In this document: positions 5,953-54,992 of the stretch, piece after piece
Layout: every line of letters begins with the position of its first letter
Numbering within the stretch: position 1 is the stretch's first letter
Assembly: GCA_037379345.1 (NCBI GenBank)
Contig: CM074513.1
Coordinates: forward strand, 53,981,195 to 54,045,194
Origin: Perna viridis
Taxonomy: Eukaryota
Direction of reading: 5' to 3'
DNA: 64,000 nt
Notes under the pieces: model-generated
The model's input: the letters and a program-made list of their open reading frames with translations, nothing else
Databases searched by the model: none
What the model was told of the DNA's origin: nothing
Translations under genes and position numbers: made by a program

Positions 5953-6204
5953 TCTTATATTTTGACGCCATAACACGACTTTCACTCACAAATCCGACTG
6001 TTAAATAAAATTTAGGCTAGAGTTTTGTTTACCTATTTACTGAATAACGGTAATTACTACATTTCTTATCTAAGAAAAAAGTACTTTCAAGACCAAAATC
6101 CTTTTAAAATTCAATACGCGTGCAATCCCAAGTCGTAAAAATCCATACGGTTATTATTATGCTTTCTTGTTTAAACGATATTAGTAATTGGCTCTACTTA
6201 TAAA

Positions 6205-6530
6205 GAGAAGAGTAATCAAGGGAACCAAGATTCTAGCTGAAATTAAAAGAATGTAACCAAGGGACAAAGACCAGACATGGAAAACAAACACAGGAAAGAA
6301 CATAAAGTAACTAAAATAATACATACAAAGTGACAATTGTAAATGAGCAACTTGGACTCCACTGAAAACTGGTAGCATGGACCAGGTGAATCGGTAGGGT
6401 AAGCGTCCTCTGCTTTTCTTGAAACAATCACCGAGTTGGTCATAAAAAGTCAAGTACGGGATAGACGAAAAAAAAATCAGTTTTCATTGTGCAGATGGAT
6501 ACACCGTAACGATCCACGAGTTCATGAAGA
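6205..6530 (-). mobile_element. Penelope-like 3' end, copy B
   Basis: Aligns to 43735-44085 with an internal deletion. Confidence 0.8.
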
Positions 6531-7338
6531 AGAGTAGACTGCACCTTTTTATGACTCCATGAACTAACAAGACGAAGAAAACAAAACAAATCAAATCAAA
6601 ACAAAATACGAAAAAAAAATAAAATGAACATAACAATCCGTCTACGTTTCATATCCTTGGGATGCGAAATAAATCAAATAGACACACCTTAGATTCTTCT
6701 TCTGGTATCCAGTTATCCATCACATATTTAATGATTACTAACTGTTGTGCATGCGTGGTGAAAACCAAAACATTTATACATTTATCAAATGCCAAAAAAA
6801 AAAAAAAAAAAGTGATGAAAAACAAACAAAAATCATGTGAATAAAGATATTTACATTTTTACTGGATTTAGTCTACATTTCTGTTGTCGAAAGAGCTGGA
6901 GCCAGCTGACCTTTAAAAGCTTCTAATAAATTGACTCAACTGGTTATATCCGTTGAAACGGATAAATGCAGCAGGTTTTTTTTAATACTATACATCTTTA
7001 TTTTAAGTGGATGTTCATTGCTGGTGTTACTATTATTTCTAAAACAACGAAAATATCATACTAGTGTCGAAGTCAAACTTTCTATTGTTTATGTTTGAAT
7101 ATATTACATGATAAGTACTTGGATTTACCCATGTAGTTCTTCAAGTCGAAGAATGTGTGTTTTTCGAATTTTTAAAAGTTGAAAAATAAGCAAAAAAAAA
7201 TGTATACTCGTAAAATTAAGATTAAAAATAAAAATAAATTGAAAAAAATCACAAAACGGCGTAGTGTTAAATGCAAAGTGCGCAAGATAATAAAAAAAAC
7301 CCAATAATTTGTTGTTTTTTTTTGGTTTTTTTTCACAG

Positions 7339-14758: not shown

Positions 14759-15792
14759 GATATTTCTTTAAACAATATACTCTATGAAAACCTTAAATTG
14801 AATGTTTCGGCAAAAATATCCTTGAAAAAAATACATAAAATACAACCTTGTTATTTCAAATGTCATTGCACAACATTGGCTAATCAGATTGCATAGAAGT
14901 ATAATATTGTAAAATATACTCTCATAATAAGCTACAAATTTATGTATAACTTTATATAAATCTAACTTAAATACTGGCACTTTCTATACAACTTTTCAGT
15001 ATATACTATTGTGTAGTCTAAATTGCTTCATTTTTTTCTATTTTCTTCTGTCATTTTGTTTTATCATTATTTCATTAAACTTTTACTTCAACATCTTCAG
15101 CAATTTCTCTAGTGATATCATTCTATAACTAAGTTCAGGAATTTAATAAAATATATATCTGTCCCTGATCCTTTTCCATAAAGCTGGACATGACCAGCTG
15201 TTCCTAACAACCTGAAACTTACATGTAGTTATATACAAAGTATCATATCTTAGCAGAATACAACACATACATATCTCTTGCAACTTATTTAACAGTTATA
15301 AATGTCCTGGTCATTGATAAAACTCATCATAGGCCTTACATCAGTCACCAATTGATTACATCTGTAATACTTGTCAATTAAACACATCAATAATTTTGAT
15401 AAATAATTTCCATTAGAAATTCCAGCATCAAAACTTATGAGCTAGTGATTATTTTGAAAACAAATCATTGAAATAAATAAATTTGGTGATTTAATGGCGT
15501 CTAATTGGACAAGAAGTATATTTTTCAGACATCTTGAATTTATCTTGTTTTAACTAATCACTCCTCATCAAAATCATTGAACCATCTCCCTACAGACTTT
15601 GATCAATAAAAGTTCACTCAACAGAGTGAATGAAGTGATTACCATTTGATAATCAATCAATAATTAGTTTGATCATTTAGTTAAATCAAGAAATTTGAAC
15701 AGATTTATATACATGTTTTATAGCACCTACTTAATCATGCCAGTAAATTCTTTTACAAAAATCTCCAGTGTCTTTATAAAGAGATTCCTATG

Positions 15793-15867
15793 TCAACAGA
15801 ATTCCTCCATACTTCTCAGTTCTATGATATTATATATTGCCTGCTGGACATCTTCATCCATATGACC
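15793..15867 (-). CDS. Terminal coding exon, GHMDEDVQQAIYNIIELRSMEEFC*
   Basis: GHMDEDVQ family motif; TGA at 15793-15795. Confidence 0.9.
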   Translation of the reverse strand, partial: GHMDEDVQQAIYNIIELRSMEEFC

Positions 15868-18800
15868 CTGATAACATATAGAAACAACACAATCAATGCC
15901 CTCTTTGTTAGACATTTCAATAAATAGCTATGTCATATCAGACTTTAACCCAAACATGTCACACTAGATGTATTTCCACTAGTTGTAACAGGTTGTCTTG
16001 AGATTGTAATATACCATTCAACACAGATATTAATGAAATGAAGTACAAAATGGATAGACACTTTTTTAATTATTTATGGGTTGTTTTACATTTTTGACCA
16101 GGTTATACAGAATTACCAACTTGGGGGCAGTTTACACTTCATGAAGCAGTCTATGAACAAGTGTTAAGTTGGTTGCGCAAGCATAATTCGGTCAAAAATT
16201 GAAAATAATTCTTATAATATAATTTCTAATGAATTTAAATCAAAATTAATTAAGATTTGTTCCTACATCAAAGTCTTTACTTCCGAATTATTTGAATTGC
16301 AGACTGATCGATGTTAATGACGTGACAGTAACAAGTCAGTATATGGAAAATAACCTATTTTGCCCAAATGAGAAATAAACAACAAAATTAAATTTTTTAA
16401 AGATATATGAAAATATGATAGACAGTGATAAGATGAAATAAAATATCATGATCAATTACATTCCACAAATGACTTATGACAGGGGTCACGCTGGGCTTCG
16501 CCAATGTCGCAATTTGCGATTTTTTATTTGATCTGGTGACAAAAATAACCAGCTGGCAATTTTCTTGGCGCCTAAGCTTTGTATAATAAAATTGACAGGA
16601 AGTTTATCAGCAAGGGATATTTTCTCTAATTATCAAATTATGTTGGCACCTGGTCAGAGTTAACTGACCATGACCAATTTACGACTGAAGGCAATTAACG
16701 GTAATTAGACCAGACGACCGTGACCGACAATATCATGGGAGGTGTCAATCAAATGAAAATATATTATTGAGCCAATCAAAACTCTCATCACCTAGTCAAA
16801 GGTAAACACAGTTATGGCCATGTGCATGTGGCTACATGCAAGCTTCACAGCCCTGTTTAACCATGTGATACATTCAGAAACAGACTTATCTAATAACAGA
16901 ATAAATTAAATCCAATTAACAATGATTATCCCATCAGGAAGTGTCTAAACACTTAGAAATTAAAGAATTGATGAAAGAAAATGGATGACATTTGTTTACA
17001 CTTTTGCCATGTGACTTTTTGGCGGGAAAATCGGTAAACAAATAGAATGGGGATTCCCATAATCTAATTAAGGAAATACTATTCAGATACCAGGATAATT
17101 AAACAGGATCTAATTTCTGAAAATTGGCGACATAAAATGGCAGCTGGCGATTTTTCTGGCGACAGAATTTTGGAAGCCAGAGCAGCCCCTGCTTATGATT
17201 GATAATAAACTCCTTCATGTCAAAAATTGCATAGTTGATGCACCATGGCTTCATAGTTAATGAAACATAGCTAGCCATTTAGGAAGAGTTGAACATTCCA
17301 ATCATTAAATACAATACAGAGATATAAACATACCTGTACTGCACTGATAAGATGTGTCCTGTAAGTGTTGACGATATCCATATGTCTTCTGTCTGTCTCC
17401 TGGAAAACAATGTCATAGTCTTTATGTTAACATTCTATACTACATTGTAATATCATATCAGTAACATGTAAATAAGTTTGCTTTAAACTATATATAACAG
17501 TATTCTACTCCTGGAATGGGATTAAGATAGTATTAACTTCATATTAAAAAACAGGCATATTGTAAATAAGAAGATTTTTTAACAAGATATCACATTGTAC
17601 CATAAAGGATGAAAACAATATGTACTCCAAATTTTGACATACCTGTAATCTTGAAAGTTATTTAATACTCTAACATTAAAATAATGACAGAAATACATTT
17701 AGTTCCTACATGAGATCTATATGCTTGAGAAACTGAAGCGAAAATTCAATACAAGAATGGAATAATACCTGGTCACATCAAGGAAACAACCTGCTGTCCT
17801 ATACACACATTACATACATATGCTTGGTAAGACTTCCACAAAATAAAGATATAGAAGAAGCAAAGCATAAATAAAAGTCACTTCTACAAACTGATTATGT
17901 GTGAATTGAAGTGTATCTACTGAGTTATCTATGTTTCTACGACAACAAGTGTATACCTTTCTACCAAAGTGCTTCAAATGATGTGCTGATTTCCACACAA
18001 TGTATACCTGATGTACAACTTGAACACTTTTTGATTTATCTCTTTGAACACATGGTTGGCAAGTTAACACAGAAATATAACACAATTCACACTTATACAG
18101 TTTGTAGAGGTTGACTAGAAACGTACTGCTAACTGCTGCTGGAGTCTTTGAACCTGGACTTGTAATGATTTGATCTGTTTCTCTTTATCTGTTGTAGCCT
18201 CTGTATCTTGTTTAACACGCAATGAAGCTTCTTTCTTCAACTTCTCTAGAGTTTTTCCTAATTCTCCTCTTGTCCTTTCCAGTTTCTCCTCCAACAAAGC
18301 ATTGTTTTTAGATAATTCTTTAATTGTCATATCAAGTTGATCTTTTTCATAAGTTAACATTTCATTTTCTTGTTTTAATTCTTCCGTTTCCTGTTCAGCT
18401 AGAGGATTTTGTTCCTTAACACTAGCTGTTTGCACTTCTAGAAACTCTGTCTCCAATTTTTCTTTGTCTGCCAGTAATTCTTGATAGTCTTGCTCCAGCT
18501 GATTATAGTCCTGTTGTATCCCTTCATGTTGCTGAGTCAGCTGATCAAACTCTTCCTGAGAGGTCTCAAAATCCTGTGTTATTTGTTCATTCTCTGACTG
18601 CAGCTGATTGCACTGTTCCTGCATACTTTGAACTTCCTCCAACACAATTTCATGATCATGCTTTAATTTTTCATTTTCAGTCTGTAGTTCTTGGCATTGT
18701 TCTTTAAGTTTATCCCTCTCCTCTATAATTTTAGCCATTTCACTAGCCTTGGCTGGGATATTAACAGCACCAAGCTTCCTCTCAAGGTCTTCCTTTTCAC

Positions 18801-21800
18801 TTTGTACAATCTTTAGCTGTTCCTGCATGTCTTCTACCTCCTGTACAAGTTTTTCTAAATCATTGTGCATAGCATTACCTTCCAACAACAGAAATTCATT
18901 TTCTTTTACTATTTCTTCCTTTTCCCGAGCAAGTTTTTCTATCTCACCAAACTGTTGATCTTTTTCAAGTAGGAGTTGATCATACATGTCTTGAAGATTG
19001 TCACCAGCTTGTACTAGTTTTTCATATGTTGATTGCAGATTGTCAAGATCTTGTCTCAATAGAAGGTTTTGTTCTAACAGTTTCTCATTGTTATCTTTTA
19101 GTTGAAGAACCTCAGATTTATCATTAGAACCATCAATTTCAGTCAGAGGTGATTTACTCACTAAAGACACTTGTTCACTTGAGACGTGGTCAACAACAGG
19201 CTGAAATAAATACAGCATATATTTGGTTTAAAAGGGTAAGGGAAGTAAATGTGAAATGATCAATTTAAAACAGTATTAAATTGAAACTTTCATCTATCAC
19301 TACATTTTCACTATGGGCAGATTAACTATGGTTTAAAAAGTTAAAAAGACTTGTGTTTTTATTTTTTTTTAATTAACTTATTTTTTTTTCCCAATCCTCA
19401 CACCCTCCCTCTCCCTACTGCCCTCTCGGCAACATTCAATACTTTCTCACCAATCAAAAATTATCTCAGTAAATTATTTCATGATACAAAATATTCTAAT
19501 GCAAGTTGACTTACTACATTTATAATAATGTATACAATAAATGGTCACAGCAAATCTGGAAAAAAATATCTTTAAAAGGGGGCCATGATTGTAATATTTT
19601 ATTTCCTCTATTAAGCTCTTTCGCAACAAAGAGCTCTGAACTATAAATATTTAAAACCTCCTTTTTTCATCCCATTATATCTGGGCACTTTTCCTCCAAT
19701 TTACATTTGAAAATAAAATTTTTGGCAATTACCAAAAGTAAATTCAATAAACTCCTGGGAAAAACTCTGCCTTTTTCAATTCCAAATCAACATAAAGGTT
19801 AAATGCATTTGTTAAAGGGTAAAGGAGTTTCAATCAGCAGATGAATACTTCTGCTTGTTTAACTCTTTGAACTTGGATCAAATGACATTTTGCTTGAATT
19901 GTTCACCTAGAAAATAAGAAATCTAGTGCCCATATAGTTTGATCAAGTGGAATTTAAAGTAAATAATTTCTAGCAGTCCTTCCTTACATCATTTCTGCAA
20001 AATTTGCTAAAACTTGATTAAGTATTTGCAGTGATACACAAGTATGTCAAAATGTGTTTCCCTTTCAGATTTCATTGGCTGCTGAGTCATCTAAGCCACA
20101 CAAATAGTTCATATTGTGTAGAGAGCAGTGGGGTCAACAGCCTTCACCTCAGCTACACAAATAGATAATATCGTGTAAAGGACAATGGGGTCAACAACCA
20201 TATATAGTTTCAAATTATCAGCACCTGTATTTTCAGAGGAGTTCATCTTTGAAATTTGCAAATTAGAGGCTTAGATAGCCCTGGCAGCAATCTTGTTCAA
20301 TCAAGGGGAATCAAAAGTAGATTGTTTGTATAGGCTCTACCAAAACTGCTAAGTTTGCTCAACCTTGGTTAAGAATATGCAGAGATATAAGCCAAAATGG
20401 GTTTTCATGCAGGGTTCCATAATCACCTTTGAGCAGCTACAGCCGTCTTAGCTCCTAACCACTTCTACATTATAAGTAGTTGATGATGCTTAAGGTGAAG
20501 TCACAAAACTCTGACAGCCCCTAAGCCACAATATCACTATCTGTTGAGTACTGTATATACTCGCATATAAGTCGGATTTTTGGGAGTAAATTCTGAGTTG
20601 CTTAGAGGGATTCCGACTTATAAGTGAGGTCTTGGCTGTGGGTTAAAAATTCTTGTCGGAAGCAAGTGGGAGAATCAAGGTATTGACACGAAAATGACAC
20701 CTACGTTAACAGTCAGATCGGCACCGTACTTGTGTATTGTAAAAGTCGACCTATATGTCATATTTGTTATTGTTGTGTATGGTTATAAAGTGATGAAATA
20801 AATGAATATTTGCAGTTTTATTTTTATTATGCCTTACAACTAAACTATCTTTAATAAAATTTGTATTTCCTGTATCAGCTTCTTGTGTTTGTTATTTCCA
20901 CTTGCATGTCACATGGTTGTTGAATTTATCTGAATACCAAAAAGATGGCATGAAACATGGCTAAGCGATGTACCGTAGTCTACAAGTAATATTAGCAATG
21001 CTAAGAAATAATTAAAATTTAATTTTAAATTGTAATAAAATTTCATAACAATATAACGATAACAGGTATGGTGTACATGTCAAAGAGAACCGTCTTCATA
21101 GACTTGATTGAAAAGAAAACAATGGAAGATGATTACCGGGTAAAAAGGTATTATAACATTAACGAGCAATCAATCCTTTAATCACATTAATGGGTAATTA
21201 ATTTATTAAAATCGTTTGATCTCAATAGGTGTCCATTTTTCCGTTAAAAAATTTTTCTTCACAGTTCTTAGTTTTTACTTATTCTAATCTGGTCATTAGT
21301 TGTATAAACAAATTATCGTAAAAATGGCTTTCATGCTTGCTTGGGTCATCGGTAAACATGGAAGAATGATGATAATTCAAATGGCTTCTTATATTAATTA
21401 TGTAAATAATTTCAAATATGTACAGAGGAATTTGATTTAAAACACAAAACATACACATGTTTATGTTGATCAGACACAACGTACACCCTGGATGTAAAAA
21501 CTTCTGCAGCACAAAAAAAAAAACAAAGCAAAACAAAACAAACACATGATCATTCTTCACATTTTCCACCAAAAATTGTGCCCTTCCTTACAATTTTACT
21601 GATTGTTGTACCAGTAAAAATTTGGTAAAAGTTCCATCCGACTTATAAGTGGGTCAAGGCTATATTCCAGAATTTTTGGTCCGAGAAGGGGGTTCCAACT
21701 TATACACGGATCAACTTATAAGCGAGTATATACGGTAACTTTATTATGATAGAGTGGTATCAGGATTTAACTACTCTTTTCTTTATCAAAATTTTTCATG

Positions 21801-24800
21801 ATGTTTCATGCATACTTTTTCTGTTAATTCCATCAGCTTTCATACTAACTCTGTAATATTCAACTTTTTTTACTAATTATTCTATATACCTCAGCTTCCT
21901 TTTGTTCAGCACCAGATGATTTAGTATGACTACCTAAGTAACTAGAGCTATATAAAATTTGAAATATTTTCTCAAGTTCTTGTCCTTTCTGACATATCTC
22001 CTCCTCCTCGGATTCAGAACTGGTTTTAATGATGAACTTGATATCACCAACAAAACTCTCAGCTGATGAGTATTGTCCTGATGTCAATTTTTTCTGTAAG
22101 AACAAATAACAATTTCACATTAAACTTTTAAAAGTGATGCATTTGAAATGTATGAAAAAAAACATATTAAGAAAACAAATTAAAAAAAAAAAAAAAGATA
22201 ATGTTGAGTTTTTATCACATTGAACTTTTAATGTAATGAAATTCTTCAATACAGATTATCTAAACACTGACATAAACATATCCAAATTTTCTTGATTGGA
22301 AATTGACCCATGTCTAGATTTTTGCTCTGTTACCAATTTTTATTTTTAAATTAGATATCCCTACTCACCTGTACAGCTGTAAGTGATTGAGAATCTGTTT
22401 CTGTACTACAGAAAGGTTCAGTTATATCCTGCAAGATAAAGACTTCTCTATCTAAGAATCAGGCGAAATGTGTAAAGAGAAAAGAAACACAGATATTTTG
22501 AAGCATTATCCAAATATTTTTTACTACATAACCCCAAGAAACAACAACAAAAGTGTTGGTAAAGTTTGCCTTTTTAAAAAATTGAATTGTCAAGTTTAGT
22601 TGAAATGCACTATGAAAAAATGGCAAGATAATTTTCATACACTTTTTCCCTAAATAAGCACTTAAAAAATATCCAAGTCACAGATGCTTCAGGATAAATT
22701 TAAATTGCTTTTCTAGATGTACTGAGTATATATAGGGCAAACATGACTAATTTGGGAAAAATAGTGTGCCACCAATTGCCTGACTTTTACACAGAATAGT
22801 ACTTTAATATCTACCAGATAAAACCATCACAAAGTTTTTGCATTACACTTTCTACTCTTTTTAAAGTTTTAACAATTCTTCAATCAGAAAGGTAATCAGT
22901 GATTTGTTTAAGAATTGGTCCTGTTCAAGTTATTCTATTAAAGTAGAAGAAAATGTGACAAAATTCCTCTTTAGACAAATTGACAGATGAAATGCATGAA
23001 AACCTTAACATGGGTATTGGAATTTATCCTTATCTTATATACAAGTAAAGGAAAGTAATTCAATATCAATAACCAATAGTCCAGACGGCTTAGCTTCTTG
23101 GTTATTGGTTGATATCATTTGTTTTATTCCCAACAGTACAAAGTTCATGTATTTCTAAATAAATAGTGGACAGCATCATTATTCAAGAAAAAAGAGGTTA
23201 AGAAGGGATACTGTCATATTTAAACCCAACAAGTTCTTGTTTACTATATGATGTTTGTTGAAAATGTTTCACTGTTCAGCACAACAAATAAAAACAAAGT
23301 TTGTAAGACAAATTTTGATATCTGTGACATTATTTACTATAAACAAATTTATTTTTAAATGCACTTTATTTTGGCTATTTTCACATGAAACAAAGTAAGT
23401 CTGAAAAATAGTACTCACATAATTGAATTTTAATATGATAAACTTAGTGATTAATGCCTTCAAATTTTACAGACATCTCTTTCATGAAAAATACATTTCT
23501 TCTTGCAGTAGGCATTACATTTATTTATCTCCAACTGAAATCGTACAAAAAATATAGACATCTACAGGAATATATAATAATTAAACAGATGGTTTGATTA
23601 TATACCTGATACTTGGGTGATAAAATTTCCTCCATTAATGAAGAGCAGGCATTATACTGGTCTGTACTGTTTCCCAATTTATACTGGTTCTAGAAATAAA
23701 TACAATTCATAAAAAGGTCTGGTGAGAGATTCATTGCATGTTCACATATGATCGGATGTAAAAAGAAGACTATCTTAATATAATAAATAATTTGATGAAT
23801 TCACAGACAGAATGACAAAACTGCAAAATTTACATTTTCATTGTTGGAACAAAAGACTGAAATTGTAAAAAGATTACATATTATATTAATAAAACTGATG
23901 CAAATGGCTACTTCAGGAGTTCAAAATTATTTTCAAGAGGGTAAGGTCCTTGACTTTTTAAACTTTTACATCAATAACAATGGTTCACTTGAGGAAAACC
24001 CAAACCACACTAAAGTGTCAACGAACCAAAGCAACACTTAATGTGTCAAAAACCGAAGCCATACTAAAGAGACGTTGAACAAAAACCATACTAAAGAGTC
24101 GTTGAACCAAAACCATACAAAAGTGTCAACAAACCAGAACCACACTAAAGCATCATCGTACCAGAACCACAGAACCACACTATAGTGTCAACGAATCAGA
24201 ACCATACAAAAGTGCCAAAAAAACAGAACCACACTAAAATGCCAACGAATCAGAACCATACTAAAGTGCCAACGAATCAGGACCATACTAAAGTGCCAAC
24301 GAACCAGAACCACACTAAAGTGTCAAAGAATCAGGACCATACTAAAGTGCCAACGAACCAGAACCACACTAAAGTGCCAACGAACCACAATCACACTAAA
24401 GTGTCATCGTACCAGAACCACACTAAAGTGCCAATGAACTAGAACCACACTAAAGTGTCAACGAATCAGGACCATACTAAAGTGCCAACATACCAGAACC
24501 ACTAAAAAGTGTCAATGAAACAAAACCCCACAAAAAAATCTATGACAAAGATTAATGGATCAAGGACTTAGATAAATGAAAATTTAAAACTGAGGACCCA
24601 CATTAACCTGAATCCCTGTGCTGAACATTCATTCAACTTTAAGTCAAACTCCTGACATTTTTTGTTGCCATTTCCTGACCTATGTACAGAATTTATATCA
24701 TAAAAAGAGCAGGAGTACAAAACATTAAAGGAAATTAATTATCAACTTTCAAACTACTTTGCATTTAAGTACAAAAACAATAAAGAAAATACAAAGTAAC

Positions 24801-27800
24801 AAACTACATTGTATTCATTTTACACATTTCAGTGTTCTACTCATGTCCAAGAAATATACTGACTCACATAAAAAAAAACTGCAAAGATTTTTACAATGGG
24901 AAGGGGAGATAAAATTGAAAGAGTAACTTATACCCACAGGACTCGATACATGCATTTGTTAATTTTTTTCTTATGTTATCATCACAGAACAATTTAATGT
25001 AATTTCTATCAATGTCACAAAATAAAAAAAAGTCATGTGAGACAGAGTACTAACCACTTGTAACTGCAATGATTCCCTGTGTTTCTCTAACTGTGAAAGT
25101 TGATGACTCATCACCTCCATTTTCTGAAGTAATTCATGATCTGAAGTTGTTGTTGTTGTCTTGCTGTCTTCATTCTATTTAATAAATTAAAACTGAAGTT
25201 CCCATACTCATCAAACCCTTAAAGGCTTATTTAAAAATAATAGTAAATTGATAACTCACCTCTGCCAAATATGAAATCAGCTTTATTACAGATTACACAT
25301 TCAATAACATATATCCATTTAAAGAGTAATAGACATTTGATTAAACTGAACCAGATTAAAACTTATTTCCAGGTTTGTTTTCTAAGTTATACCTTCTGCA
25401 GTATTTTTAACTATTTAAACTGATGGTATTATACATGGTTTACAACGAAGAATCTTATAACTGTACTATTTCATTAACAACAGACTTGTTAAGACCATGC
25501 TTACAACTCATGCTGGAATGTTTTCTTTAAGTTATAAAGTATATTCAAAGTTGAAATGCATGTAACAATTTACAATGTATTACAACATCAACATAACCAG
25601 CCAATCAGAACAAACAATTTAAGACATGCTCATATATATACAAAGACAAAGTCTATATTTTAAGTTAAATAAAGATGAATCTGTAATAATTTCCTGTGTT
25701 TCTCTAACTGTTAAAACTTCTATTCTTTGTTGTTCTTTCTGAATCTTGAAAAGTTCTACAAAATCTAGGTCTAGAACCAAATTTTCAAAATGCATTGATG
25801 TCCTCTATAAATAAACCCTATCAAAAATCAAAGCTAGCATTAGCGCATTGAACTAAATCTTCAGCGGGTGAAACTGTCCTCATAACCCAATAAAAGCTGA
25901 TTTATTCACAGTTTAAAACCAAACCAGCACTGGATATATTCACTAACTGACTAATTGGTACACAGGATAAGGATAAAATATCTTAATTTAAAAGAAAAAC
26001 AATTTTCTTTTCAGGGACCTCACTACAAATTAAAAAAAAAATGATTTCACACTTTTGTACGAACAAGTGGTCCATGCATGTGAAAATGCTACTAAATTTA
26101 AGAACATGCAGATAATGAGAATGTATTAAAACCTTTTACATGATGTCTACAAAAGAGATGTTTATCATAATGAAAAGTCAGTAAAGTAAAAAAAAAAGCC
26201 ACACAAAAAATTATTAGTCATTAAAATGATATTCACACAAAATAAAAAAATAGAAATGAAAATTAAGTCAATTATCCAAAGGACATAATTTGAAAAAAGG
26301 CAAAAACTAATGACACAAATACATTTTCCTTCAAATATCCTTGTTACAGATTTATTGGTAAAAAATAAAATTTTATTTCACCATGCAAGCTATAACCCTA
26401 TTTTTTTTTAAATATTTAAATTAAATCTACACAATTCAGAAACAGACTTCATTGACAAAAATCTTAAAAAAATCTTTTAGCAACTGTACAAAACCTTAAC
26501 AGATTCAAGAACTAAGATATATTGATTGGACATACAATGTTGCGTGATTACTTTATTATTGCGAGAGAAAAATTTAAAGAGTATACCTGTACTTGTTTTT
26601 GCTTCAACTGCTCATTTTCTGATTGGTATGTTAGAATCTGACTCCTTAGGAGAGCGATTAGCTGTTTGTCATCAGTGTCTCCATCTCTATTTGTCTTTTT
26701 ACCTACAAAGAATCACAGAGCATTGAAATGATATTACCTACAAAGTATCACAGAGCATTGAAATGATATTACCTACAAAGTATCACAGAGCATTTTCTAT
26801 ATTTGACAGATACAGCAATACTTAGTGGGCATAATATCTATAAATATCAAACACCACTTATATTTAAATCCATGAAACTAATTTATCATTGTATGCTACC
26901 CATATTTCCACCAATTAAATAACCTAATATGTTGACACTATTATCACATTTTCTAAATTATCATAATTAGTAATTTATATACAAATGTATTTAAGTTGGA
27001 AACAAGAAGTAAGTAGTGGACTTCAGTAAACAAAGAATCAGTTGATCACTTTTTGTCATGAGTATTTTTATCTGTATTAGATGTTATGTTTCTTAATCTA
27101 CATGTAGTTTGTGTACTATTACAATTCCCTGTCATGTTAGTCCTACCTCTCTTCAATGAACCAAACAGTTCCTCTTCACTGTCATTCCACTCCCCTGTTG
27201 TATCTATCCCATCATCTGTACTCTAGAACATACAAAGATTGTAAAGCATGGCAGTCATTTGAAACTAATAAAAAAAAAACAAGATTGCTACACATAGCCA
27301 AATGTCCCTGGCCATCCTAAATAAAGATAGTGCAAAAGTCCCACAACTCCTATAGAATTTGACGAATCAAAATGGTGGCACAATATGATCCAACTACATG
27401 TGGAGACTATCAATCCTACAAATTTTAAACAAAATCCATTAAGCTGCGTCCACAAAGTTAAGTGTGAAAGATGGACACAGGGATGCACAGATGCATGGAA
27501 ATCGGTATTTTTATGCCCTTCTCCACGTTGCGGCTGAGAATAAAAATGTTTCAAGGATAACACTGATAATATATATATGGGATAATTTACAGCTCCTTTC
27601 ACAATGAACCCAATATTATGACAACAAAACTTCATGAAAAAGATTTAAAGCAAACATAAACCCAAAGTAGGCTGAATTAACAAATTAATCAAAAGTAGAC
27701 AAGATTGAGACACAAAATTGCAAAATCAAAATTCCAAACCACAGATATTAATTCACACAATAATCTAGAGATTAACAAAAATGCAGTATTAAAAAGCATT

Positions 27801-30800
27801 AATAAGGAAATCTGTAAAAACTGAGACTGAACCAGGTGATAAGCCTAAATCAATCATTTTTCATCAAATCCACATCCCTATCGCCTGATCTCTGTCAAAA
27901 CCAATCTTATCCAATTCATACTACTAATTAAGATTCACCAAAGTATGTAAGAAATCTGTCAAATTATGAAGTAAATAAATTTTACCTAAACCCCCCTCCC
28001 CATGCTTTTTATTGGTACAAATCAGAGATATTAAGACAGTACATCATACCTCAGTCATGGTGTTAGATATGGAGACAGAGGGTGAGCTAGTTGTTTCCGT
28101 GGTCTGTGATTCTAACTGATTCTTCAAATCCTTGATCTGAAAATAATTGTACATTTATGGTAAATCTTGTCCATTGTACACTTACAATACTAGATTTAAA
28201 TGAATATTTTAATGTCCCTGACCATTTGCTTTACTCTTATTGCCACACAGTTTATTTTGACTGAACAATGCCCCATTTTGTGCTAAACTCACTTATCCTC
28301 ATTCACCATAGAGTTAACTAAATGATATATTTGTCATTAATAAGACAAAATTTACACCTGATCATGATGCCGAAGTTCCATTAAGGTAGTCTTAAATCAA
28401 CAACTTGGAAGTCGTTTTTAGGTTAACTTTGTGACAAGCTTATGATCATAATGTCCTAAATAAATAATCAACTACATCAAGAGTCTTAACATTCTGAGCC
28501 ATGTTTATAAAGTACTAGTTCACAGAAGCAACAGCCCACAGGTAAAATTGATAACCAATACTTATACAAACACTGTACACCATAGTTTACCTTTTGCTCA
28601 TAATCCTGAGTTTCTTTTGATTTCTGTAATAAAATATTTTTACTTGTAAATAAGAGTCTGCGTGAAAACAAACTACTCTGACAACTCCAAAACTGATGAA
28701 AATGTTATTGATATCCTAAACTTGTATTAGCATAACAAACACAGAATAAAATTCATAATGTACTTTTTCCATGCTGATTACCCAAATATAAATGACTTAG
28801 TTCATTTTTCATTTAATTTTGATATAGTGTTGTATTATTATTATTCTTTTAATGAGAGACTAGGATCTGTCGTTATAATTTACTTAACAATGAATTGTAT
28901 ATTTGATGTGTGGAGGACTATTTTCATCTTATCTATCATTCTTCTATAATAGTTAGCAATGTTTGATGAGTTAAGTGGGGTTCCATCATGCCTGAATGGA
29001 GAATTATTTCTTGTAACATCATTTGTCTATATAATAATGTAAAGACACTTCATATGATCACTGACCTCCTTTAACTGATTCTGTAATGAGGTAATGGTGT
29101 CTTGGTTTTTGATGTTCTGAATTCTCATTTTATGTAATTCATCATTCAGCTGATCATTTTCTTCTTCGAGTTCCTAAAAATAGAATATTCTAAATAATAT
29201 TTACACCAATAAATAGGAATCATAAAAAAAGTAGATATTTTATGATGTAAGTAAATCTTCATTTTCTTGGTTTCTTTTTATATTCAGTATTTAGAATTTA
29301 CCTTGTAACAATAGACATTTTTGAGAAAGAAAAGCTCTTTGACTTCAGAAACAATATCTGATAGATCATATATGTCACAGTATTGTCAATTTATGCTTCA
29401 GGAAGTAAAACAATTCAAAAGAAAGAACAGTAACAATAACCCTAAAGTCTTATCAATGAAGGGAACTGCCAATAGTAAGTCTGCTTAACAGTATTAAATA
29501 TATAATCTGGCATATAAAATACATGTTGCATGCAAAAGGTAATATGTTGTCTACATTTGAAAGTGCATTTTTCATTGATGCACCCCATCATTTAATCCAT
29601 TATAAAACTGTATAACTAAAGTCGGTGTTATTTATTAATATCCCAATAATTAGATCTGTCTAGCAATTAAAAATTAAGCAATTTGTAGTCACTGAGTAAA
29701 CAATAAAAAAAATAAAGCTGAATACAATCCAAGGAATACATAATATTGCTTTACTTTAAAAAAAACTATTAAAATATTTTTGATGAAATTGACAAAGAGA
29801 AGGAACGTGCAGAAATGCCCATGAGACCATCAAGATATGTCATGGATCAAGTATATTCTTCCACACATATTCTAATTGAATACTGTATTGGTACCAAACT
29901 TGAATATACCAAACATGTACAACAATGGAACCAATACAAGTCTGCAATCAACCCTAGTAGTAGAAACCTGACCTACTTAGTTCATTACCAAATGGGAAAA
30001 AAAATGAAGGAAATGATAAGCTGTAAAGGTAATAAAATATTCTAATGCTAACCTTAATTCAAATTTAAACAGATAAGCACAAAAAATTTGCTCAAGGAAA
30101 AAGTTCCTAAAAACGCCAATTTATCACTACAAAAAAGCAACACTTCAAATAGCTGATTACTTGATAAAATCTAAAGAATGCCAAGTATTTCATGAAAATG
30201 TTTGAGAATGGAATGATGTGTAAGAGTATGTGAGAATAGACATTCCATGTGCCATTTGCTGGTATAGACCAAATTTTTCTTACCTGTGGTCGGACATCAG
30301 CCTTAATAGGGAAAATAGTATAAATTTAACAGCTAAATATCTGATAATGCAATAAAACTTACCTGAGAAATAGTGCTTTTTATTCATGTAAATTTGAAAA
30401 GTGTCACTGTACATGATTTACTAAAGAAAGAACTGTTTGAAATCAAACCACATCTCCTATTTTAATGTTGATTTAATTGTTTTAATAACAATAGTCACCA
30501 TCACATTCATATTATCAAAGTATTATTATATTTTTTTCAGCTAAAACCATTTAAAATAATATATGCACTACTATACCTGTAGTGCTTTCTGATCTATAAG
30601 TGGTTGACTTGAAGCTTTCTGTGCTGCCTAGAAAAGAAAACAACATGGATTTAATAACAAAGAACCTAAATGAATGTTGAACAGTCAATACACCTGAATT
30701 AGTAACCTATTTTCCAGTCAACTTCTTGCAAGCAATATTTGTACCAATTTTGACAGGTATAAGTGTTATATTACATATATATATACAATAAGACTTTCAA

Positions 30801-33800
30801 GTCATTTATATATATACTGCAAACATCTTTTTAATGAATGTATTCAATTTCTGATTAGTTTATATGCTGTAACCTAATTTGCTTCGTGGATTATTCAGCG
30901 TTAACAGATCCAAATTAGGTTACAGTGTATAAACTAATCAGAAATTGAATACATTCATTATATTTTAATTAAAAAAAAAAAAAAAAAAAATATATATCCA
31001 TCACTTTTATTACACTGCGTAAACAGCAACTTTAATTTTCACGCCATGTAGTAATTATTGTAAACAAATTGGCCGCCATTTTAAAATCAGCCACAAGACA
31101 CTGTCATTTCATCACTGGGAAATGTTCAGTTATTTTCATAAATTAGAGACAGTTATTAAAGCAGGAATCTGATATAAACCCGGGGGACATAAAGTTAGTT
31201 AATAATTTATTGTCACAAAAACGTTACAATGTGACTGAAAACGTTGTTTCGGTTGTTGACAAACAAAAAGTAGTTCCTTAAAAGGTGGGCATAGCAAGTT
31301 AGTTTATACAATTGAAGCAATGTTGATTTTTGTCATCAAACCAATCAAATGGCAGGATTCTCATCAAATTAAAATATTAAACCATAATTTCATCATTCAT
31401 ATCTAAAGGTTTGTTCTCTATGAAATAAGTACCTGTTGAAGAGTTTCTTCTTTTCTCTGAGGACCAGGTGACGGTGTATTATCGGCTACAAAACAATCTA
31501 CTACATCAACCTAAAAATAATCAATTCACAAATGGCAGAATAATTAAATGTAGATAAGTCAAAATGTATGTTGTTAACAAAGAATTATGACTAAAGGTTA
31601 TTAACAAGCATCCAACAACTAACTATTACCATCTGAGAACAAACTACCAAATTTGAATTTGATCATCCTTCTTAATAACCAGAATTTTTTTTCTTCAACT
31701 CACATCAACAAATGATACTTGGAACTAGGTTTTAATTATAAAGTGGACAGTGTCTTCTAACTGATTACTCTGATTAAGAAGAAACATCTTTCACACGATA
31801 CACTTTCATACTATAATGAAATGTACATGTATAACATAAGTTTACAAACCTGATCAGCCTCAGGCATTTCTGATGTATTGGTTGCACCCTCAGCACCTTG
31901 TACGTTGGGTTTCTTTCTATCCACTACAACATACAACATAATCCATCCAAAAATTATTAACTACGATATACAAATAATCTCATGAAACATACATTATATT
32001 TTTCATCAGAGTGGGATTGTTGTCTCTTCACCATATCCATTCTCTTTATATATCATATGAAGCAGACAACTCTTATCATAACTACAGATATGACACAGGA
32101 ACAGTCTTGTTCTTTATGATAGTTTTGTCTTTTTTTTTTTTTTAGTAAACAGCATTTTTTAATCATCAGCTTTTGCTACAAAGTCATTATTACACTCATT
32201 TCAACCATAGCTTTCATAAGTTGAAAATAAATTAAAGTATCAATCTCAGTAAGAATCAGGCAGTAGATAACCTAGAACACAGAGTGTCACCTCTATACCA
32301 TTAGAATCAGGCCGTAGATAACCTAGAACACAGAGTGTCACCTCTATACCATTGGAATCAGGCAGTAAATAACCTAGAACACTGAGTGTCACCTCCATAC
32401 CATTAGAATCAGGCAGTAGATAATCTAGCACAATGAGTGTCACCTTTATACCATTAGAATCAAGGAATAAAGACAAGATTTTCCATTTTGGAAAAATGAG
32501 AAACAATTTTATTGTAATGCACTACAAATGGACGTTTCTGGGGAAGATAACTGTCAAAAACCTCACTTTTATAATAAGGTAACTAAAAATCCTCAAACAT
32601 ATCCAGTAATGCACAGATCGAAGAGCAGATAGTAATTTCAAATAGAAAAGACTTCTCAGAGTAAATATATATTACCAAATGGGTGTTTTTTTTTACAAGC
32701 ATGTTTCAGATTTTTCAAGTTCTGCCAGATAGACTTGTACTTAAATGCAATGATAGATTCCTCACATGTACTGCCTGGGACATCCCATGAGGCTCTGGTG
32801 GGGGCTTTCTCAAAAACTTCTTTAATGTCCTGATGACCTTCCTCTACTGCATGCTGCAATGCTGTATTACCTGAAAGACAAAACAATCAGATACTGTGCT
32901 ATATCTGTGTTTAAAGTCCTATAACTATGTAATCCAAAATATGTCTAAGACAAGTTTATAAAAACAACAACAGAAAATGTAACATGTTCATAGACAAAGA
33001 TATTTTATTCTTCTTTTTAAACCCAATTAGAACACTGGTTAACCATCAGACAGACTTTCTACATATTTCTTATGTTAACTAACAAAAAATTAAGGACGAT
33101 AGCATGTGAGGAAAATAAATAATCAAACTGTATCATTTAAGTGGGTTCTCAATTATATCAGGACCTCCATAATTCAATTTCATGAGCTCCTCAAATATTT
33201 CTGGGCTTCAATAATTTAATTTCTGGATCTCTGTAAAAAAAACTTATTTATGGTAGTCCTGAAATAATATGAGGATCTCAAGTAATGATAATTTTGACTA
33301 ATTCCATGCCTTATATTCATACCTCTAATATCAGTGAGGTTCCTCTCAGCACCTTTTCTAAGAAGGAACTCACAGACTTCTTTTCTTCCTCTATTAGCAG
33401 CACCCATCAAAGGAGTCCTGAAAAAACATGACATACAAGTATATGCTTATGACACTAATAGAAATAAATTACAAATTATCAGTAAATGACTTTCATATAT
33501 TTCCTTAAGTAATATGTTGATTCAGATTTTATATCATCAACAAACATCTCCTATATAAGCCAATCAATGAAATCAATGCTGTTTATTGAATCCAAATGAA
33601 AGGATAATTTCAGGTGGAAGAAGAATAAAGATATTTAACCCGAGCCCAAAGAACATATGTAATTTATTCCAGAGGTACATACATTTATGAACTACTGCAT
33701 TGTTCCATTGTACATTTTTTTTTCAATTATTCCACTTTTAGAATTAGTTTACATTCTACAATGAGAATTGGTGGACACAAAAATATTCTAACTGTTACAC

Positions 33801-36800
33801 ATAACAGTATTAAACCAAATATATGATTAGGATAATTATTGACTCTAGAAACCATTTAGTTTTCTCCTACAACTTAAATTATGCCAATGTTTCTCAATTT
33901 CAAATTAATTGATTATGACAAACAAATGGTCCTTTTATCTTCATCACATTCACGATCTCTACTGAATACTGTTAATCAATTCATTTTTGTTGTTTCAGAT
34001 ATAAATTATTTACTCTCTGTGACTAATATTCTGTTTCACATGTATACCATAGGAAAGGGAGTTATTTGCCACAATTCATTTACCAATATTTTCTTGCTTG
34101 CAAGATAATTGAAAATAAATCACTCCCATAAGCAAGTTTTTTTTTTCCAGTCAATCATATCTCAATTAAAACAGTTGATACTTACATTTGATTATTATCA
34201 ACACAGTTGATATTGGCACCTTTATCTAAGAGGTCTTTACATATTCCTACTTGTCCTGCCATTGAAGCATAAAACAAGGCAGTTCTGCCAGTCTAAAAAT
34301 ACATGACAAAATGCATTGTAGTTAGAGTATCATCTGTGTGTCTAGTTTTACTTTGGTTTGACTTAACACATACTTCACTTTTCATACTCAAACAATTCAT
34401 GTACATTGCTGAAAAATATCAAATTTATTTGTTCGAGCTTAAAAAACAGTCCCATTGTGAGTTTATACGGATCAATTATTTTTCACTGCCTGTACAACTG
34501 AATTTGATATTTTCCAATGTAGTACATGTATTGCTTTTATCCTGCAAATGTATTTCATTGTGAGAAATCTATGTAGAAAAAAAGATGATAATTCATATAA
34601 TTGTTATGCTACCATAAAACTAGTCACCTGTATGTCTACTTAAGGTTTTACTCAAAATCAAAAAGGTAATCAGGAGACTATATTATGCAATATTTGTACT
34701 AAACAAAAACAGCAATGGTTTATTCAACACCATGTATTTGAATAGTAGAACGCCCAGTTGCGGGATAAATAGGGTTAAGACAACATGTGATTTAAAAGAA
34801 AAAGATATGAAAAAATTTTTTCAAAATAATGCAAATTTCTCTCATATCTGAAAATGAAAGCACCTTTGTCTATGACAATCAGATATTATTTAACATTATC
34901 AGTTCATTTGAAGAATTTAGTGATGTACTGGGTGCTGTGGTATTATTATTATAATTTTCCATGTAAATCAGAGTTTTCCAAGAAAAAAAAAAACAGACAA
35001 TAGAAAGAAAAAGCTTTCTTGCTTTCATGATAGTATGGTGGGTTATTTTGGCAGGTGTAAAATTCGGCAAATTTTAGGCAAAACAGTATGCAAAAAACTT
35101 TGGCAATTCTAATTTTGGCAGAAGTTGTGCTTTATGTACCTAAGCTCAGAGTAAATATTTTACAGAATTCGTTTTGGCATTTTCAGACAGACAGCTAAAT
35201 TACGCCTAAATTAGCATCAAGCGAAAATTACGCATTATACGGTATGCAAACTAACCTGGTCACCCATCGAAAAGTCAGCACCATTTGCAAGAAGAATTTG
35301 AACACATTCATGGTAGCACCCCATACATGCATGGTGTAAAGCAGTTAGCTGTTGACCATCCTTCACATTTAGCTCTGCTCCAGCCTGTAATTAAAACATG
35401 TCAATATAAAATCAAGAAAAAAATGTACCCTAATAAAACATAAACCCATGCATGACGGTAACAGAGGAAAAGTAAAGCAAGACAAAAAGGAATTTTGAAC
35501 TAGTAGTTGTAAAAAGCATTATTTTTTTACATTTTCAATTCATGTTCATTCTTCTTTGTGAAAAAAAAATGATGAAAACATGAACAATTATCTTTAAAAA
35601 AAATTGAACTCTTTAAACCATAACAAATAAACAAGTGTCTTAAACACTAAAAACTGAATTATTAAATAAATAAGCAAAAAGTATGCCTGATAAAACATAG
35701 AAATACATTTTTATGGTAAATGCAAATGAACTGCCTTATTCAGAAATATATATATATATATCAGGTATATGAAAAACTTGTATCTATACCTTGGTGAGAG
35801 TGTTAACAACATTTGCCTGACCAGATCCAGAGGCTAAGTGTAATGCAGTAGATCCTACAAGTATAAAACAAATGTAACATCTTCATTCCTGCCAATTGTA
35901 ATTATGGTGGCCTTACTTAATAGTGGTGTTGTTCAATTAAAAAAAAAGATTACAGCTCAAACTTAAAAGCTGGATGTGAATTTTTAATACTTCAACATCC
36001 TTACTACCTGCTGATTATATCAATATTTACCTGCTCCAGTTAACTTTACACTTCACTCTTCTTTTGGGAAAAACATACCATAAATATTGTAAATTATCAA
36101 TGACAGGTTACCGGTACTGTATTTCTGAACACTACCACTAAAAATCATATTATGTTTGCAAAAACTTCTCTCTTCAAATTCATATTTTCAAAATACAATT
36201 TTTTTTGTACCTTGAATAGTAAGACTATTGACTTCAGCACCATAGTCAAGTAGCTTTTCCACAATGGCTTCAAATCCATATCTACTTGCTACATGAAATC
36301 TGGAAGAAAAGAAAAAAAAAGTAGTATTAATGGTTTTAATAAAGCCACACAAATACCTGAGGCAGATATAATACAAGATGTAATGTGACTGACTTTTTCT
36401 TTTCTGACCCAGTCTTTTCTCAAAGAGCTTGAATTGCTATTCTGGAAAAATTAAAAATCTGGGGCCACATTATTTGATCTAGCAGAAAAAAATCATTATC
36501 AAATATTTCATCTACAGTGGCCCATCCGTACACCTCTGGAGATTTCTGTCGACCTTATCATAAGGATCATTATAGCAACTAAATTTTCTTTCTATATGTT
36601 ATGGTTTTCAAGATATTACAAGAGTAAAAAAAAAAGAAAGTTTTTGCCTTTCAAGGGCAATAACTCTAAAAAGGAGTCATCCTACAACCTAAATTTGATA
36701 TTTTTCAGCAATGTACATGAATTGTTTGAGTATGAAAAGTGAAGTATGTGTTAAGTCAAACCAAAGTAAAACTAGACACACAGATGATACTCTGACTACA

Positions 36801-54432: not shown

Positions 54433-54992
54433 TTCTGCACTCTGTATTTGTACACTATACAGCTGTTTTCCAACCTTTAATTGTACATTATACAGCTCTT
54501 TTTCATCCTGTATTTGTACACTATACAGATCTTTTTCATCCTGTATTTGTACACTTTACAGCTCTTTTCCACCCTTTAATTGTACATTATACAGCTCTTT
54601 TTCATCCTGTATTTGTACACTTTACAGCTCTTTTCCACCCTTTAATTGTACACTATACAGCTCTTTTTCATCCTGTATTTGTACACTATACAGCTCTTTT
54701 TCATCCTGTATTTGTACACTTTACAGCTCTTTTCCACCCTTTAATTGTACATTATACAGCTCTTTTTCATCCTGTATTTGTACACTTTACAGCTCTTTTC
54801 CACCCTTTAATTGTACACTATACAGCTCTTTTTCATCCTGTATTTGTACACTATACAGCTGTTTTCCACCCTTTAATTGTACATTATACAGCTCTTTTTC
54901 ATCCTGTATTTGTACACTATACAGCTCTTTTTCATCATGTATTTGTACACTATACAGCCGTTTTCCAACCTGTATTTATACACTATACAGCT
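54433..54992. repeat. 33-bp minisatellite, ~17 copies, two interleaved variants
   Basis: Unit tgtacactatacagctcttttt(catcctgtatt / caccctttaat); gives the spurious 214-aa ORF. Confidence 0.95.

What the first reader, a model, noticed from the sequence alone, without database searches (positions are those of the whole stretch)
21890..23689. Pocket-less BET BD2-like bromodomain inserted into an ankycorbin/UACA-type cytoskeletal protein
Seen: three in-frame exons between the coiled-coil segments give DQYNACSSLMEEILSPKYQDITEPF-CSTETDSQ-SLTAVQKKLTSGQYSSAESFVGDIKFIIKTSSESEEEEICQKGQELEKIFQILY. Known (recalled): BRD4 BD2 reads [25 protein letters not shown]...[56 protein letters not shown]. All four helices align by eye (Q...CS....E, PF, KL...Y..A..F..D, E.....L..F). 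About 14 aa of the ZA loop including the conserved Tyr are missing, WPF is EPF, and the acetyl-lysine-anchoring Asn is replaced by S/E residues. Vertebrate RAI14/UACA/ANKRD24 have no such domain to my knowledge. All flanking introns are phase 0, and the TAVQ|KKL intron appears to match a BET intron at STIK|SKL (recalled, needs checking). Inference: a pseudo-bromodomain was exon-shuffled from a BET gene and repurposed as a protein-interaction module on an actin-associated scaffold.
Basis: partly seen in the sequence, partly recalled or inferred. Interest (0 to 1): 0.78.

Follow-up and report, generated by a model that had tools for sequence, protein, structure and literature searches.

The report
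Pocketless BET bromodomain in mussel scaffold
Three small exons inside a mussel ankyrin/coiled-coil scaffold gene encode a real but degenerate bromodomain that was copied, introns included, from the second bromodomain of the BET chromatin-reader gene, which makes it a clean lineage-specific case of exon shuffling and not a new kind of domain.

Summary
The minus-strand exons 23689-23606, 22428-22369 and 22093-21890 read as stated. All have AG/GT borders and phase 0. They lie in an ANKRD24/ankycorbin-like gene that spans at least 37661-15791.

- A profile of the same domain from three related mussels' spliced transcripts hits PDB bromodomains over its full length (E 1e-9). All 60 best hits are BET proteins, and BD2 wherever it could be identified.
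- AlphaFold gives a confident bromodomain bundle (pLDDT 88.6). VIA-align gives Z 14.3 and rmsd about 1.7 Å to BET BD2.
- Both introns inside the domain sit at exactly the codon positions and phase of the two introns in BD2 of this genome's own BET gene. BD1 and the TAF1 bromodomain exon I read are cut elsewhere.
- The acetyl-lysine pocket is gone. WPF is now EPF, 12-14 ZA-loop residues including the Tyr are deleted, and the BC-loop Tyr-Asn is missing.

The insert is present in all mytilid orthologues retrieved. It is absent from the gastropod, chiton, protobranch and heterodont orthologues fetched. It is single-copy, spliced into mRNA and under purifying selection.

Function is inferred: a non-acetyl-lysine interaction or structural module. 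UniRef already auto-labels a Mytilus orthologue "Bromo domain-containing".

The parts
25055..25174 (-). Upstream coiled-coil exon of the host gene (ends ...SLQLQV, phase 0). It is the 5' flank of the cassette. The start at 25174 is inferred from the AG and the frame.
   Evidence: Sequence. L035 1515-1598 maps to 25138-25055.
23606..23689 (-). Cassette exon A (28 aa): helix Z of the bromodomain. It corresponds to BET BD2 exon 1.
   Evidence: The A2 profile hits it at 38.7 bits, E 6e-7. SW score 46 against BET BD2 exon 1, 0/2000 shuffles.
22369..22428 (-). Cassette exon B (20 aa): EPF motif plus a shortened ZA loop and the start of helix A. It corresponds to BET BD2 exon 2 (34 aa) minus 14 residues.
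   Evidence: P0008 has the same 20-aa segment. Both it and the BET exon start with Asp, 3 residues before the W/E of the (W/E)PF motif. The alignment alone is not significant.
21890..22093 (-). Cassette exon C (68 aa): helices A (end), B and C, an acidic Ser/Glu BC loop in place of NCYxYN, and a 16-aa tail. It corresponds to the start of BET BD2 exon 3.
   Evidence: A2 profile 63.9 bits, E 9e-15. SW score 54, 0/2000 shuffles. 15 of the 18 weak PDB hits are bromodomains. The RNA joint 21890->19200 is.
18127..19200 (-). Downstream large coiled-coil exon of the host gene (358 codons, phase 0 at both ends).
   Evidence: It is 92% aa identical to P0008.
15791..37661 (-). Extent of the host ANKRD24/ankycorbin-like gene as mapped by a relative's transcript. 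There are at least 21 exons: ankyrin-repeat exons at about 37661-32768 and coiled coil from about 31900 downward.
   Evidence: blastn of L035 against the window. Ank Pfam hits on the orthologues.

Best explanation
In an ancestor of mytilid mussels, a genomic segment carrying the three exons of the second bromodomain (BD2) of the BET gene, with its two internal phase-0 introns, was copied into a phase-0 intron of an ANKRD24/ankycorbin-like gene (N-terminal ankyrin repeats plus a long coiled coil). It has since been spliced in as a 0-0 symmetric cassette between two coiled-coil segments. Shown: the domain keeps the bromodomain four-helix bundle. Shown by sequence: it has lost the acetyl-lysine site. 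The ZA loop is 12-14 residues shorter and lacks its Tyr, Trp of the WPF shelf is Glu, and the BC-loop Tyr-Asn is deleted and replaced by a conserved Ser/Glu-rich acidic loop. Shown: it is expressed, single-copy, and conserved under purifying selection across mussels whose synonymous sites are saturated. Inferred: it no longer reads acetyl-lysine and acts as a globular interaction or structural knob that interrupts the coiled-coil rod, possibly regulated through the acidic Ser-rich loop.
For: Homology:
- Pfam Bromodomain is the only non-ankyrin, non-coiled-coil family hit in all five mytilid orthologues scanned (17.7-26.1 bits). It is above the 21.7-bit cut-off in both Mytilus proteins scanned.
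- The profile of three transcript-derived domains (A2) against PDB gives E 9.9e-10 to 2.8e-7 over positions 6-97. All 60 best hits are BET proteins, and BD2 wherever a title or alignment identifies them.
- That profile was built without the window. In the whole genome it finds only window exons C (63.9 bits) and A (38.7 bits).

Fold:
- AF2 gives pLDDT 88.6 and pTM 0.80 from three sequences.
- Foldseek gives TM about 0.8.
- VIA-align gives Z 14.3, rmsd 1.5-1.9 Å over 89-96 of 100 residues.

Origin:
- The own-genome BET gene (C7, identified by the ET domain) has BD2 exons cut at ...KKHA|DYAWPF... and ...GSIK|KKMDNREY, all phase 0.
- The window is cut at ...PKYQ|DITEPF... and ...TAVQ|KKLTSGQY. 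The exon B and C alignments start at residue 1 of both partners.
- BET BD1 and the TAF1 bromodomain exon I read (L026) have their introns elsewhere, and another 17 bromodomain matches run uninterrupted across profile position 42/43.

Distribution:
- The HMM finds the domain only in mytilid proteins among the 134 fetched.
- Exhaustive phmmer of exon C against 1.84e9 representatives finds only mytilid-type hits.

Expression.

Constraint: pN/pS is about 0.27-0.35 in the domain. The one unsaturated pair gives dN/dS 0.27 in the domain against 0.50 in the linker just downstream. The other two linker pairs, where dS could be computed for the linker only, give 0.69 and 1.38.
Against: - The window's own exons give no Pfam hit one by one. 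Under the operators' rule the joined window protein was never scanned or folded, so the profile and fold evidence comes from relatives that are 49-64% identical.
- The BET-BD2 specificity rests mainly on helix Z, the PF region and the introns. The C-terminal half alone is generic: exon C alone ranks BAZ2B and TRIM24 first, and exon-level HMM scores rank other bromodomain exons above BET BD2 exon 3.
- Three of the four junctions were not seen in this species' RNA.
- No oyster, scallop or ark-shell orthologue was retrieved, so the age of the insertion is bounded only loosely.
- Loss of acetyl-lysine binding and the proposed role are untested.
Confidence: 0.85

Rival explanations
1. The domain is still an acyl-lysine reader that uses a remodelled pocket, which would bring acetylation-dependent recruitment to a cytoskeletal scaffold.
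For: The fold is intact and confidently predicted. The domain is under purifying selection. From general knowledge, some atypical bromodomains lack the canonical Asn.
Against: All the main pocket elements are missing together. The ZA-loop stretch holding the Val/Leu/Leu/Tyr pocket residues is deleted, Trp of WPF is Glu, and the BC-loop Tyr-Asn is deleted. An acidic loop sits where the acetyl group would bind.
Confidence: 0.06
2. The bromodomain is an ancestral feature of the ANKRD24/RAI14 family that was lost repeatedly outside mussels. On this reading it is not a mytilid insertion.
For: Oysters, scallops and ark shells were not sampled. The domain diverges fast (49-64% identity among mussels), so old copies could escape detection.
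Against: It is absent from orthologues of a protobranch, three heterodont bivalves, a chiton and the 10 gastropod orthologues fetched. Those proteins have coiled coil at that place. Several independent losses would be needed. The intron positions and helix Z still match the present-day BET BD2.
Confidence: 0.07
3. The cassette is a tolerated passenger: an expressed but functionless spacer that is decaying slowly.
For: It evolves much faster than the rest of the protein (64% aa identity to P0008 against 92% for the next exon). The ligand site is destroyed.
Against: With synonymous sites saturated, 40 of 100 positions are still invariant among three species. The frame, the splice sites and the hydrophobic core are kept in all six mytilid species or lineages. 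pN/pS is about 0.3, while the adjacent linker gives dN/dS 0.50 to 1.38. AF2 folds it confidently.
Confidence: 0.1
4. The similarity is convergent, or the copy arose by retroposition of BET mRNA. In either case it is not DNA-level exon shuffling.
For: None beyond the low pairwise identity (about 20-25%).
Against: E 1e-9 over the full length. Two internal introns lie at identical codon positions and phase. A retrocopy would lack them, and convergence would not place them there.
Confidence: 0.02

Closest known systems
Second bromodomain (BD2) of BET proteins (BRD2/BRD3/BRD4/BRDT; Schistosoma mansoni BRD3(2), PDB 7amc)
   Same: Best sequence-profile matches (E 1e-9 to 3e-7, full length). Same four-helix bundle (Z about 14, rmsd about 1.7 Å). 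The BD2-type helix Z is kept (..Q...C..IL.EL.S.K). Both internal introns match this genome's BET BD2.
   Different: There is no WPF Trp, no ZA-loop Tyr or hydrophobic pocket residues (a 12-14 aa deletion), and no BC-loop Tyr-Asn. It is a single domain with no BD1 and no ET domain. It is embedded in a coiled-coil scaffold and not in a chromatin protein.
Atypical or degenerate bromodomains that lack the canonical Asn (a class recalled from general knowledge, not tested here)
   Same: The fold is retained while the acetyl-lysine anchoring residue is substituted.
   Different: Here the loss is compound: Asn, both Tyr residues, Trp and a ZA-loop segment are all gone. The host is a cytoplasmic-type ankyrin/coiled-coil protein.
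RAI14 (ankycorbin) / UACA / ANKRD24 family of ankyrin-repeat coiled-coil scaffolds
   Same: The host gene's orthologues are named ANKRD24-like, ankycorbin-like or RAI14-like by NCBI. They have N-terminal Ank repeats, a long coiled coil and a conserved C-terminal ...YRTHL(L/I)SAVQGHMD... motif shared across molluscs.
   Different: No non-mytilid orthologue fetched has a bromodomain. Orthology to the vertebrate proteins was not tested here.

Membership tests
Bromodomain (Pfam PF00439), homology | Significant match to the family profile | tested here: met
Mytilus orthologues score 23.2 and 26.1 bits (cut-off 21.7). Three other mytilids score 17.7-20.6. The A2 profile against PDB bromodomains gives E 1e-9. 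The window exons alone give no Pfam hit, but the A2 profile recognises window exons A and C.
Bromodomain (Pfam PF00439), homology | Left-handed four-helix bundle (Z, A, B, C) with ZA and BC loops | tested here: met
   AF2 model of the P0008 domain: pLDDT 88.6, helices 10-23, 26-35, 45-54, 60-75 and 80-99. TM about 0.8. Z 14.3, rmsd 1.5-1.9 Å.
Functional acetyl-lysine-reading bromodomain | Conserved BC-loop Asn (with the preceding Tyr) that anchors the acetyl group | tested here: not met
   In the profile alignment to BRD2 BD2, the 'YN' of NCYKYN falls in a gap of the mussel domain and is flanked by S/E residues. Window exon C shows the same 2-residue gap against the own BET BD2.
Functional acetyl-lysine-reading bromodomain | WPF shelf and ZA-loop pocket residues including the conserved Tyr | tested here: not met
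   WPF is EPF in all mytilids. There is a 12-residue gap opposite VDASALGLHDYH of BRD2 BD2. Exon B is 20 aa against 34 aa for the BET exon.
Functional acetyl-lysine-reading bromodomain | Binding of acetylated peptides | not testable with these tools
   This needs recombinant protein and peptide arrays, ITC or NMR.
BET family protein | Tandem BD1 + BD2 followed by an ET domain | tested here: not met
   The host has one bromodomain, no ET domain, and Ank repeats plus coiled coil. The genome's only ET-domain matches (PF17035) lie in one gene on another contig. Only the domain is BET-derived.
BET BD2-derived domain (origin) | Closest sequence relatives are BD2, and the exon-intron structure is shared with BET BD2 | tested here: met
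   The top 60 PDB hits are all BET proteins, BD2 where identifiable. Two introns lie at identical codon positions and phase 0. BD1 and the TAF1 bromodomain exon read (L026) differ. No formal phylogeny was made.
RAI14/UACA/ANKRD24 scaffold family (host gene) | N-terminal ankyrin repeats followed by a long coiled coil | tested here: met
   Ank Pfam families score 1e-24 to 1e-42 on residues about 20-250 of the orthologues. Coiled-coil-type weak hits lie downstream. The window exons map to these regions.
RAI14/UACA/ANKRD24 scaffold family (host gene) | Orthology to the vertebrate proteins, and actin association | not tested
   This rests only on NCBI product names of the orthologues. No vertebrate sequence was compared.

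The most novel reading that the evidence does not exclude
The pocket-less BD2 has been neofunctionalised, for example as a phospho-regulated module (its conserved Ser/Glu-rich BC loop looks like casein-kinase-2 substrate sites) or as a reader of a non-acetyl ligand. This would give the mytilid ANKRD24-like scaffold a lineage-specific partner and would show directly how a chromatin reader fold is re-used in the cytoskeleton.
Probability: 0.25. Interest if true: 0.6.

Novelty: new variant of a known kind. Interest (0 to 1): 0.52.

Why it matters
Well-documented animal cases of exon shuffling in which the donor gene, the recipient gene, the retained donor introns and the phase-symmetric cassette are all still visible in one genome are uncommon. 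This is such a case. It moves a nuclear chromatin-reader fold into an ankyrin/coiled-coil scaffold and strips its ligand site while selection keeps the fold. That gives a natural experiment on what a bromodomain bundle can do apart from reading acetyl-lysine. It also shows that automatic 'Bromo domain-containing' labels on the Mytilus orthologues should not be read as acetyl-lysine binding or chromatin function.

Tried and rejected
- Pfam on the three window exons one by one gave no bromodomain hit. The exons are too short, so I moved to orthologues.
- Alignment A1, which mixed domain pieces with full-length proteins, produced a 1025-position profile. The PDB search returned only ankyrin proteins. 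I discarded it and replaced it with the domain-only alignment A2.
- I ranked this genome's bromodomain exons with the A2 HMM. The ranking is not fair, because BET BD2 is split by introns while others are contiguous. It only shows that the C-terminal half is generic and that the N-terminal half matches BET BD2 exon 1 alone.
- PDB search with window exon A alone gave nothing. Exon C alone gave only sub-significant bromodomain hits.
- dN/dS: synonymous sites are saturated in most pairs, even with the closest relative. Only pN/pS and one pair (0.27) are usable.
- Read laying: no contigs cover 21950-25140, apart from a few isolated low-depth bins and a repeat at 22550-22749, so three junctions stay unconfirmed in this species. 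The loose ends at 22442 and 24955 lie in introns or repeats and are not splice sites.
- Convergence, retroposition and gene-model artefact were considered and rejected (see rivals).
- Joined step left out: the three window exons were never joined for any search or fold. Natural spliced transcripts of relatives were used by reference instead (L035:1596-1895, L036:1599-1907, L037:1714-2016).
- The scan's earlier notes hold nothing on this.

Full report
**Observation**

Read on the minus strand, the region holds three exons:
- Exon A, 23689-23606 (28 aa)
- Exon B, 22428-22369 (20 aa)
- Exon C, 22093-21890 (68 aa)

Each is bounded by AG and GT and is in phase 0. The upstream exon ends at 25055 and the downstream exon starts at 19200, both in phase 0. 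The cassette is therefore 348 nt = 116 codons and is 0-0 symmetric.

**Host gene**

An exhaustive phmmer search with exon C against 1.84 billion representative proteins found three hits:
- an ORF copy from the same species
- a 1032-aa Mytilus californianus protein (P0002, "ANKRD24-like")
- a 93-aa fragment

Word-based searches then added more orthologues:
- Mytilus edulis orthologues ("ankycorbin-like"; one is named "Bromo domain-containing protein" by UniRef)
- three transcript-derived mytilid proteins (P0006, P0007, P0008)
- orthologues from gastropods, a chiton, Solemya, Mercenaria, Dreissena and Mya

All have N-terminal ankyrin repeats, a long coiled coil and a conserved C-terminal motif. 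The transcript that encodes P0008 (L035, a Logan RNA assembly) maps onto the window as at least 21 exons between 37661 and 15791 on the minus strand. Its exon boundaries fall at 25055 and 23689/23606, and the match resumes at 19177, just inside the exon that starts at 19200. Its protein has the same order ...QV|NQYKLG...KYQ|DI.EPFC...|..L.SG.YSS.

**Expression in the window's own species**

Contigs of two runs from two studies carry the joint 21890->19200 (GT..AG on the minus strand). Depth is 67-97, against about 5 for intron contigs. Nothing was laid over the bulk of exon C or over exons A and B. The tool warns that such a dip is no finding, so three junctions rest on the relatives' transcripts only.

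**Is it a bromodomain?**

The window exons give no Pfam hit one by one. I used the natural spliced transcripts of three relatives by reference instead (alignment A2).

Sequence evidence:
- Pfam Bromodomain is hit in all five mytilid orthologues scanned (17.7-26.1 bits). It is above the 21.7-bit cut-off in both Mytilus proteins scanned. It is not hit in the gastropod or Solemya orthologues scanned.
- The A2 profile against all PDB sequences gives E 9.9e-10 to 2.8e-7 over profile positions 6-97. All 60 best hits are BET proteins. The printed alignments and the titles seen identify them as second bromodomains. The best is Schistosoma BRD3(2).
- The same profile was built without the window. Across the 723-Mb genome it finds only window exons C (63.9 bits, E 9e-15) and A (38.7 bits, E 6e-7). 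The cassette is therefore single-copy, and the window belongs to this domain family.

Fold evidence:
- AlphaFold2 on A2 gives pLDDT 88.6 and pTM 0.80, with helices at 10-23, 26-35, 45-54, 60-75 and 80-99.
- Foldseek finds BET BD2 structures at TM about 0.8.
- VIA-align gives Z 14.3 and rmsd 1.5-1.9 Å over 89-96 of 100 residues.

**Origin**

This genome's only ET-domain matches lie in one gene (PF17035). It sits on contig C7 and carries BD1 and BD2. BD2 is split into three phase-0 exons:

| Boundary | BET BD2 | Window cassette |
|---|---|---|
| First internal intron | ...ELMAKKHA \| DYAWPF... | ...LSPKYQ \| DITEPF... |
| Second internal intron | ...DLGSIK \| KKMDNREY... | ...SLTAVQ \| KKLTSGQY... 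|

Both internal introns are at the same codon positions and in the same phase. The middle exon starts with Asp in both, and the third exon starts with Lys-Lys in both.

Controls:
- BET BD1 is cut elsewhere (NLP|DYF and KPGE|DIV).
- The TAF1 bromodomain exon I read (L026) is cut one codon away at the second site and differently at the first.
- Another 17 bromodomain matches in this genome run uninterrupted across that profile position.

Exon-by-exon local alignment of the window exons to the BET BD2 exons gives these scores:

| Exon pair | Score | Shuffles reaching it |
|---|---|---|
| A vs BD2 exon 1 | 46 | 0 of 2000 |
| B vs BD2 exon 2 | 15 | 300 of 2000 (not significant) |
| C vs BD2 exon 3 | 54 | 0 of 2000 |
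| Sum | 115 (z 11.2) | 0 of 2000 |

Shared introns exclude retroposition and convergence. They point to a DNA-level copy of the three-exon BD2 segment into a phase-0 intron, which is classical exon shuffling.

One caveat applies. The BD2 specificity comes from helix Z, the PF region and the introns. Exon C alone looks like a generic bromodomain, with BAZ2B and TRIM24 first at E about 0.07. Exon-level HMM scores do not single out BET BD2 exon 3.

**Degeneration of the ligand site**

In the profile alignment to BRD2 BD2:
- Trp of WPF is Glu.
- A 12-residue gap removes the ZA-loop stretch that holds the pocket Val, Leu, Leu and Tyr.
- The Tyr-Asn of NCYKYN falls in a second gap.
- Cys-Tyr is replaced by Ser-Ser, followed by an acidic run (SSESEEEE in the window, with similar Ser/Glu-rich loops in all mytilids).

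Exon B is 14 residues shorter than the BET exon. The domain is therefore very unlikely to bind acetyl-lysine in the canonical way. This is inferred from sequence and was not measured.

**Distribution and constraint**

An HMM of A2 finds the domain only in mytilid proteins among the 134 proteins fetched. The orthologues from 10 gastropods, a chiton, Solemya and three heterodont bivalves have coiled coil at that place. No oyster, scallop or ark-shell orthologue was retrieved. The insertion is therefore dated only to the lineage leading to Mytilidae, after its split from the heterodont lineage.

Synonymous sites between the mussels are saturated (pS 0.6-0.86). Even so:
- The domain keeps 40 of 100 invariant positions among three species.
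- It keeps 64% aa identity between the window and P0008.
- pN/pS is about 0.27-0.35, and the one unsaturated pair gives dN/dS 0.27.

For that same pair the adjacent linker gives 0.50, and the other two pairs give 0.69 and 1.38 for the linker. The ankyrin region gives 0.08-0.12, and the C-terminal coiled coil gives 0.025. The cassette is thus the fastest-evolving folded part of the protein, but it is clearly constrained.

**Mechanism**

Shown: a BET-BD2-derived bromodomain fold, spliced in-frame between two coiled-coil segments of an ankyrin scaffold, with the acetyl-lysine residues gone.

Inferred: it acts as a globular interaction or structural module that interrupts the rod. The conserved Ser/Glu BC loop is a plausible regulatory (phospho-acceptor) surface.

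**Novelty**

Two full-text searches found no paper that links bromodomains with ankycorbin or with a Mytilus ankyrin protein in this sense. Automatic annotation already flags a Bromo domain in the M. edulis protein, so the domain call itself is not new. What is new:
- the BET BD2 origin with retained introns
- the lineage restriction
- the compound loss of the pocket

I class it as a new variant of a known kind, of moderate interest. The scan's earlier notes contain nothing on it.

Noticed in passing
window 24003-24535 (intron between the 25055 exon and exon A): An array of a 27-nt unit, 19.4 copies at 76% match. On the plus strand it is open and reads as a 9-aa repeat (...NQNHTKVPT...) for 97 aa. 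It is probably an intronic minisatellite.
   Followed up: partly
window 22550-22749 (intron between exons A and B): RNA-like contigs pile up here at depth 343-741 in all four runs, against 0-20 elsewhere. This is probably an abundant expressed repeat or SINE-like element. The loose ends at 22442, 22590 and 22624 belong to it.
   Followed up: no
window 7294-11040 (+): A single uninterrupted open frame of 1249 aa with no Pfam family at E <= 0.01. It may be a large single-exon gene or an exon of unknown function next to the scaffold gene.
   Followed up: partly
window 6184-6483 (-), 43688-44031 (-), 36796-37017 (+): Similar open frames recur (...SMLPVFSGV.VAHL...CMY.FSYFMFF...), which suggests copies of one dispersed repeat.
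   Followed up: no
G000:C10:13372653-13376222 (L025, L026, L029): A double-bromodomain gene that looks like TAF1. The intron in the bromodomain exon read (L026) lies one codon away from the BET/cassette position (..SILK|KVQ..). It was used here only as a control.
   Followed up: partly
P0005 (Mytilus edulis, 965 aa) vs P0004 (1026 aa): The M. edulis 'unnamed protein product' model keeps the bromodomain cassette but lacks the coiled-coil exon just upstream of it. This could be an isoform or a gene-model gap.
   Followed up: no
window 54395-55036 (+): A long open frame made of a repeated ...CTLYSSFSSCI / FPPFN... unit (214 aa open in two frames). It is probably a coding-looking tandem repeat.
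   Followed up: no
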